Shown in pieces: positions 44,100 through 54,266 of a DNA stretch of 64,000 bases (position 1 is the first letter of the stretch; every line of letters begins with the position of its first letter). Made by a program: the position numbers and the translations under genes. Source of the stretch: Chrysemys picta bellii (taxonomy: Eukaryota); contig NC_088794.1 in assembly GCF_011386835.1 (NCBI RefSeq), positions 142,662,001 through 142,726,000 of the forward strand, given 5' to 3'. The notes beneath the pieces were generated by a model. The model was not told where the DNA came from and ran no database searches. It was given only the letters and a program-made list of their open reading frames with translations.

Positions 44100-45340
44100 C
44101 GATGGTTCGCCTAGGGAGGCGAGCCTGGAGGCGGCGGCTGCTATAAAAATAAGAAATCACTATCTGGGAGTGTTTGTGCAGCGACCCTTGGTGGGGTGGG
44201 GTGCTTTATAAATAGATGTGTTTCTTAATGGTGCCCTGCCCCAAGTGCTTTGGCGGCGGCGTGTGTGGGGGGTGTTTATAAGCATTATTAATGGAGCTCG
44301 GCGGGCTAGGGGCGCTGCTGGATGGTTACTTGCAGCAGACCCGGAGCCGCTCTCACCCAGGGGAGCGGAAGGGGGGCTGTCACCCCGCTATTCCCTACTC
44401 CGCAATGCGGGGCTGGACCCCTGGGGACAAGCCCCTGGTCACCTTCGGCCCCTTGAGTGCAGCATCCCAGGCTGGGACAGACTCGCTCGCAGAGACCGCC
44501 GCGGTGCTGGCTGCTGCCCGGGATGGCAGGTCCGGGGGGAGGGGGAGTCACACTCCCCTCCCGCCTCTCTCCGTAACCCCGCGCGGGCCGCCCCCGCTTG
44601 TTTACAGGCCCCGGGGCCCAGGCGGCGGCGCGGCCCTCAGCGCCCTAGCGTACTCCGCCCCGCCGCCTCCCGCTCGGCCCGCCTGGCCCGCCTCCCCACT
44701 CGAGCCCCGCACTGCGCAGCAGCACTTACTTACCCCGCGGCGGCGGCGGCCAAAGGCACCGGCTCTCCGGGGAGCGGAGGGAGGGCAGGGCCGCGCTCTG
44801 CGCTCCGAGGGGGCCGGCGTAGGGAGGGATCCGCGGCGGGGCTGGGCCGGCGGGCCGGCGGCCTCGCTTCAGTTCATTCACAGGCAGCTGCGGAGAGCGG
44901 CTCTCTGGCCAGGGGGAACCAAGAGCTCATCCCCCCTCCTCCCGCCCCCACCCCGCTCGCTCTCGCCCTCGCCCTGCTTCGAGCCCAGCACCGCCCGCCG
45001 CCGACTCGCGCAGCGCCACAGACCCCGCTCCCCTCCCTGAGCGGCACACGCGCGCTCCCGAGCCGCCGCTCTCTCTCTCTCCTTCCACCCCGCTGTGTGC
45101 GGCGCGCGCGCTCCCTGCCGTCCCTTCGCCAGCGCGCGCGCTCCCTCCCTCCTCTCTCAAGCCTGGGCCCAGGACAGCTGCGAGTACTGCTGGTACAGCC
45201 GCCGCCTCCGGCGCAGCGTAAAGAGCCCGGATGTTGGTTGAGCTCGGAGAACTGCAAGGGGGGAGGGGGAGAAGACTGTTGAGCTATTACATCACCTCCC
45301 GGCTCCCTACTGCGCATGAGCTGCCCGGGGTTCTGGCGGG
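44100..45340. promoter_or_regulatory. CpG island / PPM1A promoter
   Basis: Sharp rise in GC and CpG against an AT-rich background; many GC boxes; NRF1-like TGCGCATG near 45311-45318. Confidence 0.85.
44734..45290 (-). other. PPM1A: Predicted PPM1A non-coding exon 1 (5' UTR); 5' boundary approximate
   Basis: GC-rich stretch ending GCCGCCGCGGG|GTAAGTAAGT, a consensus donor on the PPM1A strand inside the only CpG island upstream of exon 2. The TSS is inferred. Confidence 0.7.
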
Positions 45341-45526: not shown

Positions 45527-45564
<38 letters not shown>

Positions 45565-45568
45565 ACAC
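45527..45568. repeat. (CA)n microsatellite upstream of the promoter
   Basis: About 20 CA units with one interruption. Confidence 0.95.
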
Positions 45569-46004
45569 AACCCCAAGGGGATCGGTGACCTATGCTGCTG
45601 TGTGGTGTACAGGGGATCTAACCAGCTCAGACTGATATGATCAAGATACTCGCCTGCTCCGAGGCCGTGGCTGGGGACTGAGCGTAACATGCATGGGGAA
45701 ACCGTTTCTCAGTCCCCAGAGAGGAAAAGACACTGTACCACACAGCAAAATATACTCCTTGCTCACTACATACGCCATCCCCACAGGGGAGGTACTCTGC
45801 AACGTACACAACAATTATACATGCACCCACACACGCACACCATTCCCAGTAACAACCCCTGCACACAAGCATGCCTTCCCCCTCCCCCACACCGCTCACA
45901 GTAACATCTCCCTGAGATAAAATATACAATCCCCCCCCCCCAACAGGGCTAACAAACGAATGTGGTCTCAGGTGGCCCTACCCGCCCGAGGCTCATGTGA
46001 GAGA

Positions 46005-47033
46005 TGTCAGAATTGCAGGGAGGAGCTTAAAAGGGAGAAATCCAGCTCCAACTAGCTTGGAGAGTAGGTCCTGAGTTCATCCAGTTGTACTTCGTCTCTG
46101 ACTATGAGCCCACAACTGAGGACTTCTGCATGAAGATTTGCAGCATTGATGGGACCCCGACCCAGCTAGACTTCCTGGACATGGCAGAGCATGGGGAGTT
46201 TGGGGGTCTGCAGGAGCATTACATATGCCTATGCTCATTTATGCCATCAGTGACCACAGCAGCTTCAATGAGATCAGCAAGTTCCACACCCAAACCTTGC
46301 AGATCAAAGACCAGGATTAGTTTCCCATGATCCTTGTGGGCAACGAGGCCAACCTGGACCTACAGCAGCAGGTGCCCAAAGAGGAGGCATTGGACTTCGA
46401 CCAGGAGAATTGCATCCCCCTACACGGAGGGTACTGCCTCAACATGGATGAGTCCTTCCACAAGGTCTTCAGAGCCCTCCAGAGGTTCCAGGAGCTCTAG
46501 AACCCCCCGTCCTCACAGTGCACCCCTCCAAATAGAGTCTGAGAGCTGCCCCTGCTGCATCCTGTATGGAGGGGGGTCCTCCTCCCCCACGACCTCTTCA
46601 CCCCAACACTGTGGAGGAAGAGGGAAGCCCATCCTGGATTCTCCTGGTGGCTGGGGGGCCAATGGGAGAGGGATGAAATATTCTATAGCAGATGATGGGA
46701 GCCCAGGTAATATTTTGGGATGAATCAAGGCAAGGATTCCTCAGGCAATTGATGCACAGCAACCCTGGAGGGAGGATGAATCAACTGAACCAACTTGTAT
46801 TGGAAAAGCACCTTTACCTTAGCTAGGGAACCTAGTTAGGCCCACAGCTTTACAGAAGTATTCTGAGGGAAGAGAGGGAGGCATTCTGGAAGGGGTGGAC
46901 TATCTGGGATCAGCCAGAGGGATTGGACTGGTGTGTTGAAACCCTTGGTCACTGCAGAGCAGAGGCCTAAAGGAGTGCTGGGACCCAGTTTAGGACCTAC
47001 GGGGTGCCCTAGTATGTAGAAACATCAGTGACA
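46005..47033 (+). mobile_element. Putative 5' LTR of the Gypsy element (left boundary uncertain)
   Basis: Ends GTGACA followed by a TGGTGCAGAC primer-binding-site-like motif at 47037. Candidate start TGTCA at 46005 and TATA-like CTTAAAAGGG at ~46026. No 3' LTR to confirm. Confidence 0.45.
46073..46569 (+). pseudogene. RRAS: Processed RRAS pseudogene (5'-truncated, stop and frameshifts)
   Basis: [91 protein letters not shown]; ends CPCCIL. KICS-DG and CPC favour RRAS over RRAS2. No introns. Confidence 0.85.
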
Positions 47034-48342
47034 AAATGGTGCAGACTGCAGGCATGACCTTCCCACCCCTGGAGAAGTGGGAAGACTGATTGACCCGGAC
47101 TGTTGAACAACCTAGGCCTAAGGGTATGGTTTGGTAAGACGATGGCTACATGGACCTAGAGCATTTTCTGTAGTGGATGACTGAGGACCCAGCCCCATGT
47201 GATGACAATGGTTAAAGCCCGAGACTCAGACTGGACTCAAGGTGTCCAAACTCATCTTGGTGAAGCATTTTGCCCACATACTCCTGGCTGGGGATAGAGA
47301 CTGGGTACTCAGACACTGTCCCGAGACACTAGCCAATGTAGTCTGGCTTATAAAAAACTATCTAGCTGCTGAAATGGCTTTGGATGTGTCATGCCAGAGA
47401 CCACCTGAAGCCAACGGGGTCCCTCTATTCAAAGGAGAACCTAGTTGGGGCAATTTGAAGACTGATGGTCCAGTGTTGGGCACAGAAGTGCCAATCCCTA
47501 GGGGACCCAGTAGGGCGCAGGGCCCTGGATTGGTTCCCTGTGGAAAACCCCAGCCCAGACAAAGGCTTCTAGGACTACGCCATCTCTCAACCAGGGGGCG
47601 GGAGCAGACAAGTCACAAAGGAAGGGGTCACCTTGAATATTAGGCACAAGGCTGGAGCCCAGCTGGGGGAGTTTGCTTCTTGTGTGGGTGCACAGGACAC
47701 TTGTCTCGCTCTTGGCCACATGTGGAGTGTGATTATGGACAGATGTGGATGGTGGAAAGTCAAACCCATAAGCAGACCCTGGCTAAACTAACTATCCCTA
47801 TTTGGATAAATGGGACAGAGATGACAGGCCTGGTGGATTCGGGGCATGATCAACCCCTGATTTGGGACTTAGTTTCCCTCAGGGCTATGAGGTTTGGGAC
47901 CATCTTTCTACAATGTATTCTTGGGAACTTGAAACCTTATCCCAGTGCCCACATGCAATTGACAGCAAACATGAAGTCCCTTGTAGTGGAGCTGCCCCCA
48001 AATGCTAGTCTATGCCATTATCTTGGGATGGAATTTGGAGCATTTCTCAGAGGTACTGGGAGAATTTAAGCCCCCGGAGGGGTAAACTGAGGAGACTCTG
48101 GGAAGGGAACCTGGATATTGGTAGGTATAGGTGAGGAGCTGGACCCTGAAGAGGTGGGGTCCAGCCCAGCAGAATCTCCCACAGAGGTTCTCCCTAATAA
48201 TGAAACAATATTGGTTCCCCCTATTGGACCCTGAAAGGGGAGGGCATCATAACTAGAGGGACTGACTTCATGAGGGATCAGAGGGAGGACAAAACCCTGA
48301 GCTGAGCCTATGACCAGCTCTCAGTAGTCAATGGTGAGGTAA

Positions 48343-50889
48343 CACTGGTCTACATTTTTGAGAAGTCGTCTGCTTCAGAGATAAAATGTGCTATTTATTA
48401 TGTATTTTGATGTGCTGAATTCAAATATGACAATTAAAACAACTGATTGGCTACTGTTTCTAAGATATTTAAGTTTTTACATTTTATGTCTATGTATATT
48501 GTGTAGATAGTAAGAGTTTTAATCATAAATTGTAAACCTAGGTCTTTTCATGTGTTTATGGTTGCCTTACATGATAATATTTCACCTGTCCTGTTTATGT
48601 AACACTTTAAAAATCAGCAAAAGGGTTATATAAATAAAATTTATTATGAAACAAAAGGCAAAAAACTATAATGTACATAGTTTAGTCCTATTCAGTGTCT
48701 ACTCGGCGCTTCTTGGCTTGTCTCTTGTATTCATTAAATGGAGCATCTCTTGTCACTGTCCAGCAATAGTCTGCAAGCATTGATGGGCTCCATTTGCCCT
48801 GATAGCGTTTCTCCATTGTTGCAATGTCCTGGTGAAATCGCTCGCCGTGCTCGTTGCTCACTGCTCCGCAGTTCGGTGGAAAAAAATCTAGATGAGAGTG
48901 CAAAAAATGTATCTTTAGTGACATTGCAACCAAGGCTTTTGTATGCCTTGAGGAGGTTTTCCACCAACAACCTGTAGTTGTCTGCCTTGTTGTTTCCGAG
49001 AAAGTGTATTGCCACTAACTGGAAGGCTTTCCATGCCGTCTTTTCCTTGCCACGCAGTGCATGGTCAAATGCATCATCTCGAAAAAGTTCATGAATCTGA
49101 GGACCAACAAAGACACCTTCCTTTATCTTAGCTTCACTTAACCTTGGAAATTTTCCACGGAGGTACTTGAAAGCTGCTTGTGTTTTGTCAATGGCCTTGA
49201 CAAAGTTCTTCATCAGACCCAGCTTGATGTGTAAGGGTGGTAACAAAATCTTCCTTGATTCAACAAGTGGTGGATGCTGAACACTTTTCCTCCCAGGCTC
49301 CAATGGCTGTCGGAGTGGCCAATCTTTCTTGATGTAGTGGGAATCTCTTGCACGACTATCCCATTCGCAGAGAAAACAGCAGTACTTTGTGTATCCAGTC
49401 TGCAGACCAAGCAAGAGAGCAACAACCTTCAAATCGCCACAAAGCTGCCACTGATGTTGGTCATAGTTTATGCACCTCAAAAGTTGTTTCATGTTGTCAT
49501 AGGTTTCCTTCGTATGGACTGCATGACCAACTGGAATTGATGGCAAAACATTGCCATTATGCAGTAAAACAGATTTAAGACTCGTCTTCGATGAATCAAT
49601 GAACAGTCTCCACTCATCTGGATCGTGAACGATGTTGAGGGCTGCCATCACACCATCGATGTTGTTGCAGGCTACAAGATAACCTTCCATGAAGAAAAAT
49701 GGGACAAGATCCTTTTGACGGTCACGGAACATGGAAACCCTAACATCACCTGCCAGGAGATTCCACTGCTGTAGTCTGGAGCCCAACAACTCTGCCTTAC
49801 TCTTGGGTAGTTCCAAATCCCTGACAAGGTCATTCAGTTCACCTTGTGTTATGAGGTGTGGTTCAGAGGAGGAGGATGGGAGAAAATGTGGGTCCTGTGA
49901 CATTGATGGTTCAGGACCAGAAGTTTCATCCTCTTCCTCGTCTGACTCAAGTGAGAATGATTCTGGTGCATCAGGAACCGGCAGTCCTTCTCCGTGGGGT
50001 ACTGGGCGTATAGCTGATGGAATGTTTGGATAATGCACAGTCCACTTTTTCTTCTTTGACACACCTTTCCCAACTGGAGAAGTAACACCATGCAGAAGTA
50101 ACAATTGCTGGTATGATCTGTTGGCTCTCTCCAAATCATTGGCACTGCAAAAGGCATAGATTTCCTTTTCCTGTTCAACCACTGGCGAAGATTTGTTGCT
50201 CAAGTGTTGCAGCATATGTGTGGGGCCCACCTCTTGTCCTGATCTCCAATTTTGCAGCCAAAATAAAGGTGATAGGCTTTCTTAACCATAGTGGTTATAC
50301 TGCGCTTTTGTGATGCAAAAGTCACTTCACCACAAACATAGCAGAAGTTATCTGCACTGTTCACACAAGCACGAGGCATCTCTGCTCACTTTGGCTAAAC
50401 AGAAATGTGTCCCTTTGCAAAATCAAACACTGACAAATAAGAGAGCACGACACTGTATGATTTCTAGAGCTGATATAGGGCAATTTGTTCAGCAGAGTGA
50501 TGTAAGCTTCATTATGATTGCATCATCCATGACTTCTAGGAATAACATGATGCAATTCATATCATGTATGACGCAATACCAGCTTCAGATTGCATCATTC
50601 ATTGTTTTGCCTAAAAAGCAAGTACTGTCCAAACCCAGTCATAGATTTATTCATAGATCCAGTCAAAGATGTATTTTAGTCATTTCTGATTTAAATTGAG
50701 ATCCCTTTCCTTTATAACTCACTTATCCTCCGCCATTCCCAAGTCAAGGGTCATATATACAGACCCAATAGCATATCTTGAAAACTAGAGCCAATCAACA
50801 ATTTTAAGCATCATTTTCGTTCTCAGTGACCCAGAATTAGTAAAGTTTGACTACATTTATTTCAGAAGCATTTTGGCTGTAGAGCAGTG
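48343..50889 (-). mobile_element. Full-length Chapaev3 (CMC superfamily) DNA transposon, 2547 bp
   Basis: TIR CACTGGTCTACA / TGTAGAGCAGTG; TSD TAA at 48340-48342 and 50890-50892; the Gypsy sequence rejoins across the site (GGTGAGG-TAA-TAGGCCC). Family assignment is from recalled transposase motifs and termini. Confidence 0.8.
48688..50379 (-). pseudogene. Chapaev3 transposase with one nonsense codon and two frameshifts
   Basis: ATG at 50379 (MPRACVNSADNFCYVCGE); TGA at 50200-50202; frameshift ~50085; WRLFIDSSK, CGDLKV, CCFLCEWDSR, LPPLHIKLGLMKNFVKA; frameshift ~48935; SLKIHFLHSHLDFFP, EHGERFHQDI; stop at 48688. Confidence 0.82.
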
Positions 50890-53250
50890 TAATAGGCCCA
50901 CATCAAGCAGAGCAGTACGCTCAGTTTGAGCTCCAGGCAGAGTAACTGTACCATCTGGAGAAAGACTGGCGGATGGTTGAAACTTGATTGCAACTCTTTG
51001 TTCCCTGGCTTCATCAGCGTGAGGTTATCTAACTGGCTCATGCTTTCCCTTCTGTGGCCATGAGAATACCCTGGCCAGGATTCTGGACCACTTCTATTGG
51101 ATCAGGATTTACCAAGAGGGCAAAGACTTCTGCAGCCCCTGTCCTGATTGCCAACTCATAGGACCTTAAGGGGTGGGCAAAGCCCATCTAGCTCCACTCC
51201 CTGTAGTAAGTGTCCCATTTGAAAGAATAGGGATGGATCTAGTTGGACCCTTAGAAAAGAGTACATATTAGTGATAGTGATTATGCCTCCAACTATCTGG
51301 AGGCAATCCTGCTACTCCCCACATGCAAAGATTATTGCAACAGAACTGCTAAAGATCTTTTCCAAAGTTGGGGTACCTAAGATGATCACCACCATTCAAG
51401 GCACCAACTTCATATCTCATCTGTTGAAGGAGGTGTGTGATCTGTTAAAAATAAAAATCCTGTGTATGTATGTCTGTCATCTGCAAACTGAAGATCTGGT
51501 TGAATGGTTTTATCAGACCCTAAAAAGGATGTTGATAAAGTTTATTGCTGTGGACCCCTGCCATTGGGATCAGCTGATCCCTCCCCTTTTATTGTCTATT
51601 GGAGAGGTTTCCCAGTCATCTACTGGATTTTCCCTATTCAGACAACCCCAGGGTCTTCTTCATCTGATCCGTGAGATGTGTGAGGAACAAACTCCTAGAA
51701 CAGAGAATGTTGTTTAGTATACATTAACGCTCCAGGAGAGGCTCAAAGACCCTAGGGACCTTCACCAAAAAAAACCCTCCTTCGTGCCCAGCAATCTCAG
51801 GAGTGAGCTTATAACATAGCTACTCTCTAAATGACAAGGACCATATGAAGTAATCCATCACATATGGCTAGTTAATTATGAGATCTGACAACAGGATCTA
51901 CCATATTAACCTCCTGAAACCCTGGAAGGAGCAGGAAAGCTCATTTATCACTCCTTATTCCTCTGAGCCAGAGCTGTGGCCCCAAGCATCCACCTCCCTG
52001 GATCCTGACCCCATGCAGTTGGGAAGAGAACCTAGACCTGGAGCCAAGGGCCTAAGTGAGACACCTATTGAATGCCTTCCCAATGGTGTGCTCATCACAG
52101 CCGAGACAAATTCATCATGTTCAACACCATGTCCAGGTGGATCCAGGGCAAAATATCAGGGAGAACCCTTAGCCGCTCTCAAAAAAAAATGCAGGATGTG
52201 GTGAAACAGGAGCTCTGTGCCATTGGAACTAGGGTCATTGAAGAATCCCAAAACAACTGGTGAAACCCAGTGGTACTGATCCCTAAACTGGATAGCGCTA
52301 TATAGTTCTGCATAGATTTGAAAAAAAATCATTGCTATCTCCAAATTTGATTCCTAGCCCATGCCCCAAGTGGATAAATTACTAGCCTGGCTGGGTGAGG
52401 TCCAGTATATTATAATGTTAGAGCTTCCAAAGGATACTAGCAGATTCCACTCACACTGGAATCATGTGAGAACTGATTTTGCCATTCTGTTTGGCTTGTA
52501 TCACTTTAGGACTATGCCTTTTGGCTTCCAGGGCATCCTAGTGATGTTCCAATAGCTCATAGACTAAGTCCTCGAACCACATAGCTCACATGCTGGAGCT
52601 TATTTAGATGATGTGGTCATCTATAGTCGAGACAGGGAGGCCCACCTAGAGCAGGCTGCCACCGTCCTTTGATCCCTGCGGGAGGCTGGCCTAATTGCAA
52701 ACCTAGCAAAGTGTAAAATCGTGAAGGAAAAACCCCCTTACCTGGGTCTGGGGGAAGGGCCAGATCCAGTCCCTACTGGACTAAGAACAGGCCATGAAAG
52801 CATGCCCAGCCCCAACAACAAAGAAACAGGTCCAAAGGGTTTGGGTGGCTCACAGGTTATGATCACTGATTCATGGCAGGGTTTTCTATGATAGCGACCC
52901 CTCTCATGGACCAGAAAGTGCAAAGCTGGCAATCCAGCTGTGAATCACCAGCAAGAAGTATGGGTTGCACAATCCTGTGGTTTTTGAATCCTTTGAAAAA
53001 TGGATCATTGTCAAAGGGGAACTGAACAGGTGCAACACAGCACAGTGAGCACTTTCCTCCAACTCTAGCTGACATCCTTATGGAGCCAGTGGGAACCCGC
53101 CAATACTTCCTCTACAATTACTCATTCCCAGTCTCCACCAATACTCCCATCATCCCTTCACACTAGTCTAAAATGACAATCCCACTGTGGATCACCAGCT
53201 GCAAGCAGCAGTTTGTCAATCCTCCTGTAGATCATCAAACTGGTACCGGT

Positions 53251-53553
53251 CAGGGCCACCCGGGGGGGGAGGTGGGAGTGGGACAATTTGCCCCAGACCC
53301 CACAGGGGACCCCACGAGAGTTTTTCGGGGCCCCTGGAGATGGGTCCTTCACTCGCTCTGGTGGCCCCAGAAAACTCTCGCGGGGCCCAGGCCCCCGGAG
53401 CTTCTTCCACTCCGGGTCTTCGGTGGCAGTTCGGCAGCGGGGGGTCCTTCCGCTCCGGGACCCGCCGCCAAAGTGCCGAAGTGCCGGGTCTTCGTTGGCA
53501 CGGGCCCCCTGCTGCCAAAGACCCAGGCTCCCTGAATCCTCTGAGTGGCCCTG
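53251..53553. mobile_element. GC-rich non-autonomous hAT element, 303 bp
   Basis: TIR CAGGGCCAC / GTGGCCCTG; perfect TSD GTACCGGT (53243-53250 / 53554-53561). Confidence 0.88.
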
Positions 53554-53594
53554 GTACCGGTAGCTAGGAAACTACAGCTGGACTGGCATTGCAT

Positions 53595-53963
53595 TGTCAG
53601 GGCTGAAGCCAGCGGGTATTAACTTAGCAGGGGTGGGCAGGGGAATTTTCAAGGAGGCTGTCATGGGAATGGGGCATGGCCAGAGGGTTACTGGGGAGTG
53701 GTATGGGGGCAGCATGTGTAGTTTTCTCTGAGTCCCCAACTAGCGCACAGGCTGGGGACTTTCAGGGCTGGAGTGGGTCTAGAGGGGGAGCATTTCTCAG
53801 GGGAGAATAAGAGGGATAATGGGGCTGGGTCTGTGGCTGGAGGGACAGAGATACTGTGGAGGGCTGAGAAGCATAGGGTGGGGACTCAGCTGGAGGACTA
53901 AGGAGGTTCACTGGTTGAGGCAGCTGTCATCTTTGAGAGCAGTCAGAGATGGTGCTCATGACA
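53595..53963. mobile_element. Possible solo LTR
   Basis: Begins TGTCA and ends TGACA with purine-rich LTR-like composition; no exact TSD. Confidence 0.3.
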
Positions 53964-54266
53964 GCCACACACATCTTAAATCAGATTAAGGCTGCCCTAA
54001 TGTGAAAGCTGGAAAAGCCTTAAATTGAATGCAGATGACTAATGTGGACACACTCAATTCGTGAGGCTTCGGACTGTGAATACCATCACCTGAAACCCCA
54101 CTGAGTGACTGCTCTAATGTAAATAAGGCCTATCATAAAACATAGAGCAAAATCATTCTGCCCTTTTCAATTCCCAGAGATGGGTAGAGCTATTGTAACA
54201 CATACAGCAAAATCTCATCCCCATAGAGCTTTTTTGCACTAGAAAAGTTTATTGTGTTTAAATGCA

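What the first reader, a model, noticed from the sequence alone, without database searches (positions are those of the whole stretch)
46005..47050. RRAS retrocopy apparently embedded in a Gypsy LTR (possible host-gene capture)
Seen: an intronless RRAS fragment lies between a TGTCA/TATA-like segment (46005-46065) and the LTR end GTGACA plus primer-binding site (47033-47046). I see no poly-A tail or TSD around it. Inference: the LTR family may have captured Ras-family mRNA by template switching and spread it. The alternative is an independent retrocopy that merely abuts a shorter LTR starting near 46685.
Basis: partly seen in the sequence, partly recalled or inferred. Interest (0 to 1): 0.75.

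Follow-up and report, generated by a model that had tools for sequence, protein, structure and literature searches.

The report
Dead RRAS retrocopy inside one Gypsy LTR
A broken, intron-free copy of the host RRAS gene sits inside the left long terminal repeat of one old turtle Gypsy (Gmr1-like) retrotransposon, but only at this locus, so it is a one-off fossil and not a gene the family picked up and spread.

Summary
46073-46564 is a 5'-truncated, frameshifted, intronless R-Ras copy (Pfam Ras; best solved-structure hit R-Ras for all three pieces). It is flanked on both sides by sequence of one LTR family. 45961/45967-46048 is a highly repeated LTR start. Similarity to other family copies resumes at 46811 and runs to ...TGACA at 47033, followed by a PBS-like site (47037-47052) and a SCAN-like gag, protease, integrase and RT in Gmr1 order.

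Contigs of four turtle read sets show three things:
- The RRAS-Gypsy junctions are orthologous in all four.
- 46049-46810 is single-copy. The only other matches are two short exon-like pieces of the intron-bearing parent gene.
- Other LTR copies continue after 46035-46048 with different letters, and at least six join the LTR start to 46811 or later without RRAS.

So "captured and spread" is refuted, and so is "a shorter LTR starting near 46685". The origin of this single chimera is not settled. I favour an RT template switch onto RRAS mRNA when this copy was made (about 0.5) over a later insertion into the LTR (about 0.3). There is no TSD and no A-tail, and the 3' LTR that could decide the matter is missing. 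This is a new member of a known kind and of low-to-moderate interest. The scan also holds this same stretch under s1-325587.

The parts
45961..46048 (+). 5' segment of the LTR (U3 start, with a TTAAAAGG TATA-like motif at 46027-46034). Highly repeated in the genome.
   Evidence: summed depth is 20-30x in bins 45944-46125, and dozens of contigs match only 45996-46048. Two records begin matching at 45967; the letters before 45996 in other copies match 45963-45983 at 19 of 21.
46049..46072 (+). 24 nt of unassigned origin at the left junction (filler, very decayed RRAS codons, or decayed LTR).
   Evidence: No protein homology. Not significantly like the continuation seen in other LTR copies (p 0.06-0.27). 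Single-copy.
46073..46564 (+). RRAS-derived intronless coding fragment, running from about R-Ras residue 53 to the CAAX box. It lacks the P-loop. In-frame stops lie at 46318-46320 and 46498-46500; frameshifts lie near 46231 and between about 46500 and 46540.
   Evidence: parent exons appear as separate pieces. Three other species keep 12 nt behind 46231 and 1 nt behind 46502 that the window lacks.
46565..46810 (+). Private 246 nt, most likely the RRAS 3' UTR. AATCAA at 46779; only GGAAAAG at 46801-46807 in place of a tail.
   Evidence: Single-copy depth and orthologous in 4 read sets, three of which carry 38 extra nt at 46689. No Pfam or gag signal. Signal and A-count scan. The UTR identity is inferred, not shown.
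46811..47033 (+). 3' segment of the LTR, ending ...CAGTGACA.
   Evidence: family matches resume at 46811 (also 46821, 46946, 46950 in other contigs). Depth is 2-3x over 46763-47035. Joints link it to 45996-46049 in other copies.
47037..47052 (+). Primer-binding-site-like run, 3 nt after the LTR end.
   Evidence: Sequence read. About 12 of 16 positions match the complement of a vertebrate tRNA-Ser 3' end as I recall it (own knowledge, not tool-checked). Scan note s1-312519 reports a tRNA-Ser primer in a Gmr1 element of this genome (unchecked).
47113..47640 (+). Gag with a SCAN-like capsid C-terminal domain. The firm hit is 47206-47370; the stretch upstream of the stop at 47203 is only weakly similar.
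   Evidence: Pfam SCAN E 1.2e-6, profile positions 32-85. Gag HMM 56 bits, positions 150-210. An 82%-identical ORF exists elsewhere (P0001).
47644..48066 (+). Nucleocapsid zinc-knuckle remnant and aspartic protease (DSG).
   Evidence: tblastn of gag-protease proteins P0050 and P0052 reaches 48060 and 47961 (E 8e-26, 2e-23).
48340..50892 (-). It has an open 498-codon frame at 48734-50230.
   Evidence: ORF; no Pfam hit. The boundaries are taken from scan note s1-325695 and were not re-derived.
51023..51714 (+). Integrase: H2C2 zinc-binding domain plus catalytic core, lying upstream of RT.
   Evidence: Pfam Integrase_H2C2 E 1.2e-7. PFV integrase core E 4.6e-5.
52358..53022 (+). Reverse transcriptase remnant. 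No RNase H and no 3' LTR are detectable after it.
   Evidence: Ty3 RT 4ol8 E 0.048. RVT_1 C-terminal end E 0.29. Nothing in 53026-53986. No LTR or RRAS repeat in the window.

Best explanation
One old, now 3'-truncated Gmr1-like Ty3/Gypsy copy carries a 762-nt private block (46049-46810) inside its 5' LTR. The block holds a 5'-truncated, sense-oriented cDNA of host RRAS (coding part 46073-46564), probably with its 3' UTR.

Shown: the block is single-copy, it is shared by orthologous loci in four turtle read sets, and it is absent from every other detectable copy of the LTR family.

Inferred (favoured, about 0.5): the chimera was made in the virus-like particle when this copy was reverse-transcribed. 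Minus-strand synthesis started at the PBS and copied the right part of the LTR. It then left the Gypsy RNA for a co-packaged RRAS mRNA near that mRNA's 3' end and copied it back to about codon 53. It then returned to Gypsy RNA about 15 nt downstream of the TATA-like motif, close to where the U3/R border should lie. The product integrated once and never multiplied. The RRAS piece lacked the P-loop from birth and has decayed since.
For: - RRAS identity and lack of introns.
- Family sequence on both sides, in the same orientation: one search shows joints 46046/46048/46049 to 46811/46821/46946, 46031 to 46950/47251, and 48148 back to 45996.
- Private and single-copy: depth bins 46126-46762 at baseline in 4 runs. 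The loose ends of other copies after 46035-46048 are not RRAS and are not found anywhere in 45600-48300.
- No TSD and no A-rich remnant. A tail of 15-20 A should still be visible at the roughly 12-17% divergence seen against the parent exons.
- A 24-nt unassigned filler at the left junction. Tan et al. 2016 (PMC5131818) report 2-26 bp of de novo sequence at some junctions. They also report partial mRNAs flanked by a discontinuous LTR element without poly-A or TSD, in chicken and zebrafish among others.
- Prior (inference): LTR-mediated retrocopies are always embedded in element sequence, whereas a LINE-made retrocopy would land inside a roughly 300-nt LTR only rarely.
Against: - The RRAS copy is 5'-truncated but appears complete at its 3' end (full C-terminus plus 246 nt). 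This is the usual signature of poly-A-primed LINE retroposition.
- Published LTR-mediated cases mostly replace internal ORF sequence, not LTR sequence.
- A switch within the LTR should put RRAS in both LTRs, and the 3' LTR is missing here, so this prediction cannot be checked.
- Microsimilarity at the junctions could not be examined, because I had neither the parent mRNA nor full sequences of other LTR copies.
- Whether LTR sequence was replaced or merely interrupted is unresolved (one search reports 'between: not known').
Confidence: 0.5

Rival explanations
1. Post-integration nesting. An ordinary LINE-made (or break-repair-made) RRAS processed pseudogene happened to insert into the 5' LTR of an already resident Gypsy copy. 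The TSD and A-tail were later lost, or never formed in an endonuclease-independent insertion that also deleted some target sequence.
For: - 5' truncation with an apparently complete 3' end.
- A TTAAAA site lies 15-20 nt left of the junction.
- The scan notes a retrocopy with full TPRT hallmarks elsewhere in this genome (s1-340571, unchecked), so the machinery exists.
- Divergence of RRAS from the parent exons (12-17%) is in the same range as divergence of this element from its relatives (9-21%), so the relative ages do not exclude this.
Against: - No TSD and no A-rich remnant. The joints show no letters that fit on both sides ('both' = 0).
- Low prior probability of hitting a roughly 300-nt LTR in the same orientation.
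- The continuation seen in most other LTR copies after 46048 is missing from the window. This speaks for loss or replacement of LTR sequence, not a clean insertion.
Confidence: 0.3
2. Family-level capture. The LTR family acquired RRAS and propagated it, so RRAS is a regular part of a subfamily's LTR.
For: Only the embedding itself. Copies more than 20% diverged from this one would not have been laid at the 80% threshold.
Against: - In four genomes' contigs, no RRAS-like match exists other than this locus and two exon-like pieces of the parent.
- Internal parts of the family are detected at 79-91% identity, so sister copies carrying RRAS should have been seen.
- All joints between the LTR start and 46811 or later skip RRAS.
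- No second copy in the window.
Confidence: 0.04
3. Coincidental juxtaposition. An older RRAS retrocopy is flanked by two unrelated fragments of the same family: a solo-LTR stub on the left and a 5'-truncated element on the right.
For: No 3' LTR and no TSD of the element are available to prove that the two flanks belong to one insertion.
Against: The two flanks have the same order, orientation and roughly the expected LTR positions as in at least six other copies. Two independent insertions bracketing a 760-nt block in this way are very unlikely.
Confidence: 0.06

Closest known systems
LTR-mediated chimeric retrocopies (Tan et al. 2016, Genome Res 26:1663, PMC5131818)
   Same: A partial host mRNA copy in sense orientation, flanked on both sides by discontinuous sequence of one LTR retrotransposon. 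No poly-A tail, no TSD around the retrocopy, and a short unassigned filler at one junction. Reported in vertebrates (chicken, zebrafish, mammals).
   Different: Here the host piece sits inside the LTR, near the predicted U3/R border, and does not replace internal ORF sequence. The 3' end of the mRNA seems complete. Microsimilarity was not testable. The second LTR is lost. The case is old and decayed, whereas the published ones are young.
LINE-made processed pseudogenes nested in transposable elements
   Same: Intronless, 5'-truncated, dead on arrival, single-copy, with a complete 3' coding end.
   Different: No TSD and no A-tail remnant. Part of the target LTR appears to be missing.
Retroviral transduction of ras genes (Harvey and Kirsten sarcoma viruses; own knowledge)
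   Same: A Ras-family cDNA joined to retroelement sequence downstream of an LTR promoter.
   Different: The fragment lacks the P-loop and a start codon, was never propagated, and lies in a non-infectious Gypsy element. There is no sign of function or selection.
Gmr1-like Ty3/Gypsy elements with SCAN-like gag (Gmr30 group; PMC3424704, citing Emerson and Thomas 2011)
   Same: Integrase lies upstream of RT. The gag carries a SCAN-like capsid C-terminal domain. The family is abundant in this turtle genome according to the scan notes.
   Different: This copy is broken by a nested DNA transposon, lacks RNase H and the 3' LTR, and shows no detectable capsid N-terminal domain between the PBS and the SCAN-like part.

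Membership tests
RRAS processed pseudogene (retrocopy) | Closest homology is to R-Ras, not to other Ras paralogues | tested here: met
   R-Ras is the top hit for all three pieces, ahead of R-Ras2, M-Ras and K-Ras.
RRAS processed pseudogene (retrocopy) | Continuous across the parental intron positions | tested here: met
   the parent matches only as separate pieces (46259-46374, 46482-46565), with unlike flanks inside the contigs. The window is continuous across these borders.
RRAS processed pseudogene (retrocopy) | Poly-A tail and target-site duplication (LINE hallmarks) | tested here: not met
   no A-rich 12-mer (maximum 6 A) and no junction repeat beyond chance 6-mers.
LTR-mediated chimeric retrocopy | Retrocopy flanked on both sides by sequence of one LTR element, in the same orientation | tested here: met
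   joints and the depth profile. Gypsy gag and pol lie downstream on the same strand.
LTR-mediated chimeric retrocopy | Element sequence replaced by the retrocopy, not merely interrupted | tested here: inconclusive
   The continuation of most LTR copies after 46048 is absent from the window. For the closest subfamily, the letters between the two flanks are 'not known'.
LTR-mediated chimeric retrocopy | Microsimilarity between the mRNA and the element at the switch points | not testable with these tools
LTR-mediated chimeric retrocopy | Both LTRs present (and, for a switch inside the LTR, both carrying the insert) | tested here: not met
   No 3' LTR and no second RRAS copy in the window. The element looks 3'-truncated, so this is loss of evidence and not evidence against.
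Gene transduced and spread by a retroelement family | Several family copies carry the host fragment between the same flanks | tested here: not met
   single-copy depth over 46126-46762 in 4 read sets, and the other copies lack it.
Gmr1-like Ty3/Gypsy | pol order protease - integrase - RT | tested here: met
   Protease up to about 48060, integrase 51023-51714, RT 52358-53022 (the RT hits are weak).
Gmr1-like Ty3/Gypsy | SCAN-like capsid C-terminal domain in gag | tested here: met
Gmr1-like Ty3/Gypsy | tRNA-complementary PBS next to the 5' LTR end | tested here: inconclusive
   47037-47052 starts TGG, 3 nt after ...ACA. About 12 of 16 positions match a tRNA-Ser 3' end recalled from memory. There is no tRNA gene in the window to compare with.

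The most novel reading that the evidence does not exclude
The RRAS block marks a failed first strand transfer. Strong-stop cDNA reached the 5' end of the Gypsy RNA (the R start, at about 46811-46821) and jumped to the 3' end of a packaged RRAS mRNA when it should have jumped to the 3' R. It then rejoined Gypsy RNA at the end of U3. This would place host cDNA exactly at the U3/R border, about 15-30 nt after the TATA-like motif. It would be a fossil, in a reptile Gypsy element, of the step by which retroviruses are thought to pick up cellular genes, here a Ras-family gene.
Probability: 0.2. Interest if true: 0.5.

Novelty: new member of a known kind. Interest (0 to 1): 0.27.

Why it matters
If the template-switch origin is right, this is an old reptile example of LTR-mediated retroposition. 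That mechanism has been documented mainly from young copies in flies, fish, chicken and mammals. The switch here would lie inside the LTR and not in the coding region. The practical result is negative but useful: the Ras-family piece is a dead, single-locus passenger. It is not a cargo gene of an active turtle Gypsy family and has no sign of function.

Tried and rejected
1. Hypothesis that 46570-47033 is decayed gag and not LTR, raised because the SCAN-like part lies only about 170 nt after the PBS. Rejected. Pfam finds nothing in ten stop-free pieces of 46536-47258. A gag HMM built from seven relatives matches only from 47203 onward, at positions 150-210, in any frame. Family DNA similarity and the PBS-like site fit an LTR.

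2. Search for a 3' LTR or second RRAS copy: the repeat finder, blastn with words 9 and 7, and tblastn of the RRAS pieces. Nothing found.

3. The only flank similarity, 45702-45758 against 54161-54220, lies outside the LTR and is left unexplained.

4. TSD, poly-A and poly-A-signal scan at the junctions: only chance 6-mers and AATCAA.

5. Test of whether 46049-46072 is decayed LTR: not significant. Extension of R-Ras homology left of 46073: none.

No other copy could therefore be read in full.

7. The search for homologous proteins was not used. Its length window cannot reach full-length R-Ras or gag-pol from stop-free pieces of 99 residues or fewer.

8. Pfam finds no RNase H in 53026-53986, and nothing for the 498-codon transposon ORF. 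There is no tRNA gene in the window.

Full report
**What is there**

Translating 46073-46570 in three frames gives a Ras-like reading that hops between frames. Three collinear stop-free pieces hit Pfam Ras at profile positions 19-68, 74-102 and 106-137. All three have R-Ras as their best solved-structure match, ahead of R-Ras2, M-Ras and K-Ras. Homology starts abruptly at 46073, at the FIQ motif after the P-loop; fourteen more codons to the left add nothing. It ends with a CAAX-like CPCCIL at 46564.

The copy carries in-frame stops at 46318 and 46498 and frameshifts near 46231 and between about 46500 and 46540. Many arginine codons now read as glutamine, as expected from CpG decay. It was born without a P-loop and is dead.

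**The neighbouring element**

Downstream on the same strand lie these features:
- a SCAN-like gag domain (Pfam SCAN E 1.2e-6 at 47206-47370; gag HMM 56 bits);
- a zinc-knuckle and protease region matched by gag-protease proteins up to 48060;
- a nested DNA transposon at about 48340-50892;
- integrase (H2C2 domain E 1.2e-7; core against PFV integrase E 4.6e-5);
- after the integrase, a weak RT.

Integrase before RT, together with a SCAN-like gag, is the Gmr1-like branch of Ty3/Gypsy (own knowledge; PMC3424704). No RNase H and no 3' LTR are detectable, so the element is truncated at its 3' end.

I first suspected that 46570-47033 was decayed gag and not LTR. A gag HMM and Pfam find nothing there, so I dropped this idea.

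**The decisive data**

I then found read sets holding 45580-48300 (six coded organisms, all kept as Logan contigs). I laid four of them on that stretch at 80% likeness or better. The results were as follows.

1. Orthology. All four organisms have one contig running through the RRAS block into gag (for example 46019-48300, or 45810-48300). The junctions are therefore orthologous and older than the split of these species. The three more distant ones keep 12 nt behind 46231, 1 nt behind 46502 and 38 nt at 46689 that the window has lost.

2. Single copy. Bins 46126-46762 sit at single-copy depth. The only other matches are short pieces at 46259/46285-46374 and 46482-46565 (83-88% identity). These sit inside small contigs with unlike sequence on either side, so they are exons of the intron-bearing parent gene. 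This shows that the window copy is processed and that no sister retrocopies exist at 80% identity or better.

3. The LTR start is highly repeated. 45996-46048 is laid by dozens of contigs per genome. Their letters before 45996 resemble window 45963-45983 (19 of 21), and two records start matching at 45967. The repeat therefore begins at about 45961-45967, not at the TGTCA at 46005.

4. Other copies diverge after the LTR start. After 46035-46048 those copies continue with a different, mutually similar sequence. It is not RRAS and is not present anywhere in 45600-48300.

5. Joints skip RRAS. At least six distinct contigs join 46031-46049 to 46811, 46821, 46946, 46950 or 47251. One contig goes from 48148 back to 45996, as expected where a short non-autonomous copy runs from its internal part into its 3' LTR. 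The scan notes report many such short copies in this genome.

Together these results show that 45961-46048 and 46811-47033 are the two ends of one LTR, and that 46049-46810 is private to this locus.

**The LTR end**

The LTR ends ...TGACA at 47033. Three bases later comes TGG followed by a run that matches about 12 of 16 positions of the complement of a tRNA-Ser 3' end as I recall it. This is from memory and was not tool-checked. A scan note (s1-312519) reports a tRNA-Ser primer for a Gmr1 element of this genome.

**How it arose**

The fragment is single-copy and the other LTRs lack it. Family similarity resumes only at 46811, and there is LTR sequence to the left of RRAS. What remains is a one-off chimera, with two possible routes.

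(a) Template switching by the Gypsy RT onto a packaged RRAS mRNA and back, when this copy was made. This is the mechanism documented by Tan et al. 2016 (PMC5131818).
- For: the embedding itself, in sense orientation; the absence of a TSD and of any A-rich remnant, although a tail of 15-20 A should survive the roughly 12-17% divergence seen against the parent exons; a 24-nt unassigned filler at the left junction; the apparent loss of LTR sequence; and the low prior chance that a LINE-made retrocopy lands inside a roughly 300-nt LTR.
- Against: the 3' end of the RRAS copy looks complete (CDS end plus 246 nt, or 284 nt in the other species) while the 5' end is truncated. This is the LINE pattern. 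The prediction that both LTRs carry the insert cannot be checked.

(b) A later LINE-mediated or break-repair insertion into a resident LTR.

I put (a) at about 0.5, (b) at about 0.3, coincidental juxtaposition of two family fragments at about 0.06, and family-level capture at about 0.04.

A more specific version of (a) is possible but unproven. The left junction lies 15-20 nt after a TTAAAAGG motif, near where the U3/R border should be. This would fit a failed first strand transfer.

**Comparison and novelty**

The locus works like, and probably is, an LTR-mediated chimeric retrocopy. Of that class's defining features:
- flanking by one element and lack of poly-A and TSD are met;
- replacement of element sequence is inconclusive;
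- microsimilarity is untestable here;
- the second LTR is lost.

It resembles retroviral ras transduction only superficially, since it has no P-loop, no propagation and no function. It is a new member of a known kind. It is of modest interest as an old reptile example with an unusual position inside the LTR.

**Limits**

All the read data are assembled contigs, so depth is not a copy number. Rare or more than 20% diverged copies would be missed, and some human-like contigs are filtered out silently. The letters between the two LTR segments in other copies were not reported. The species name (painted turtle) comes only from scan notes and from the name attached to a 43%-identical protein.

Noticed in passing
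window 48340-50892 (ORF 48734-50230, minus strand): A nested DNA transposon with an open 498-codon frame interrupts the Gypsy pol between protease and integrase. The ORF has no Pfam hit at E<=1.
   Followed up: partly
window 44200-45300: A CpG-island-like block with GC up to 0.77 lies about 700 nt upstream of the LTR, followed by a (CA)n microsatellite at about 45527-45570. It may be a promoter; no gene was assigned.
   Followed up: no
window 53170-53950: A second GC-rich block (GC 0.55-0.64) starts where the RT remnant ends. It has long open frames but no Pfam hits. It may mark the breakpoint that removed RNase H and the 3' LTR.
   Followed up: partly
window 45702-45758 and 54161-54220: A 57-nt direct similarity (about 72%; local score 23.5 against shuffles at 13.7 +/- 1.3) lies on either side of the element but outside the LTR. 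The bin 45671-45761 also has slightly raised depth. It is probably a fragment of another low-copy repeat.
   Followed up: partly
window 46231, 46502, 46689: The window's species lacks 12 nt, 1 nt and 38 nt that three related species keep at these places. The 12 nt fall in the RRAS codons for the AGHGF region, so the retrocopy was more complete in the common ancestor.
   Followed up: yes
protein P0003 (UniRef100_A0A8C3I3H5, Chrysemys picta bellii, 399 aa): An annotated 'SCAN box domain-containing protein' is 43% identical to this element's gag over 116 residues. Its C-terminal half looks like a Myb/SANT-type domain by eye. It may be a host gene or a mis-annotated element fusion.
   Followed up: no
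window 47035-47203: Only about 55 codons separate the PBS-like site from the firm SCAN-like match. Related gags (P0021, P0052) have about 170 residues there, including a capsid N-terminal domain. This subfamily seems to have a short gag that starts almost directly with the SCAN-like domain.
   Followed up: partly
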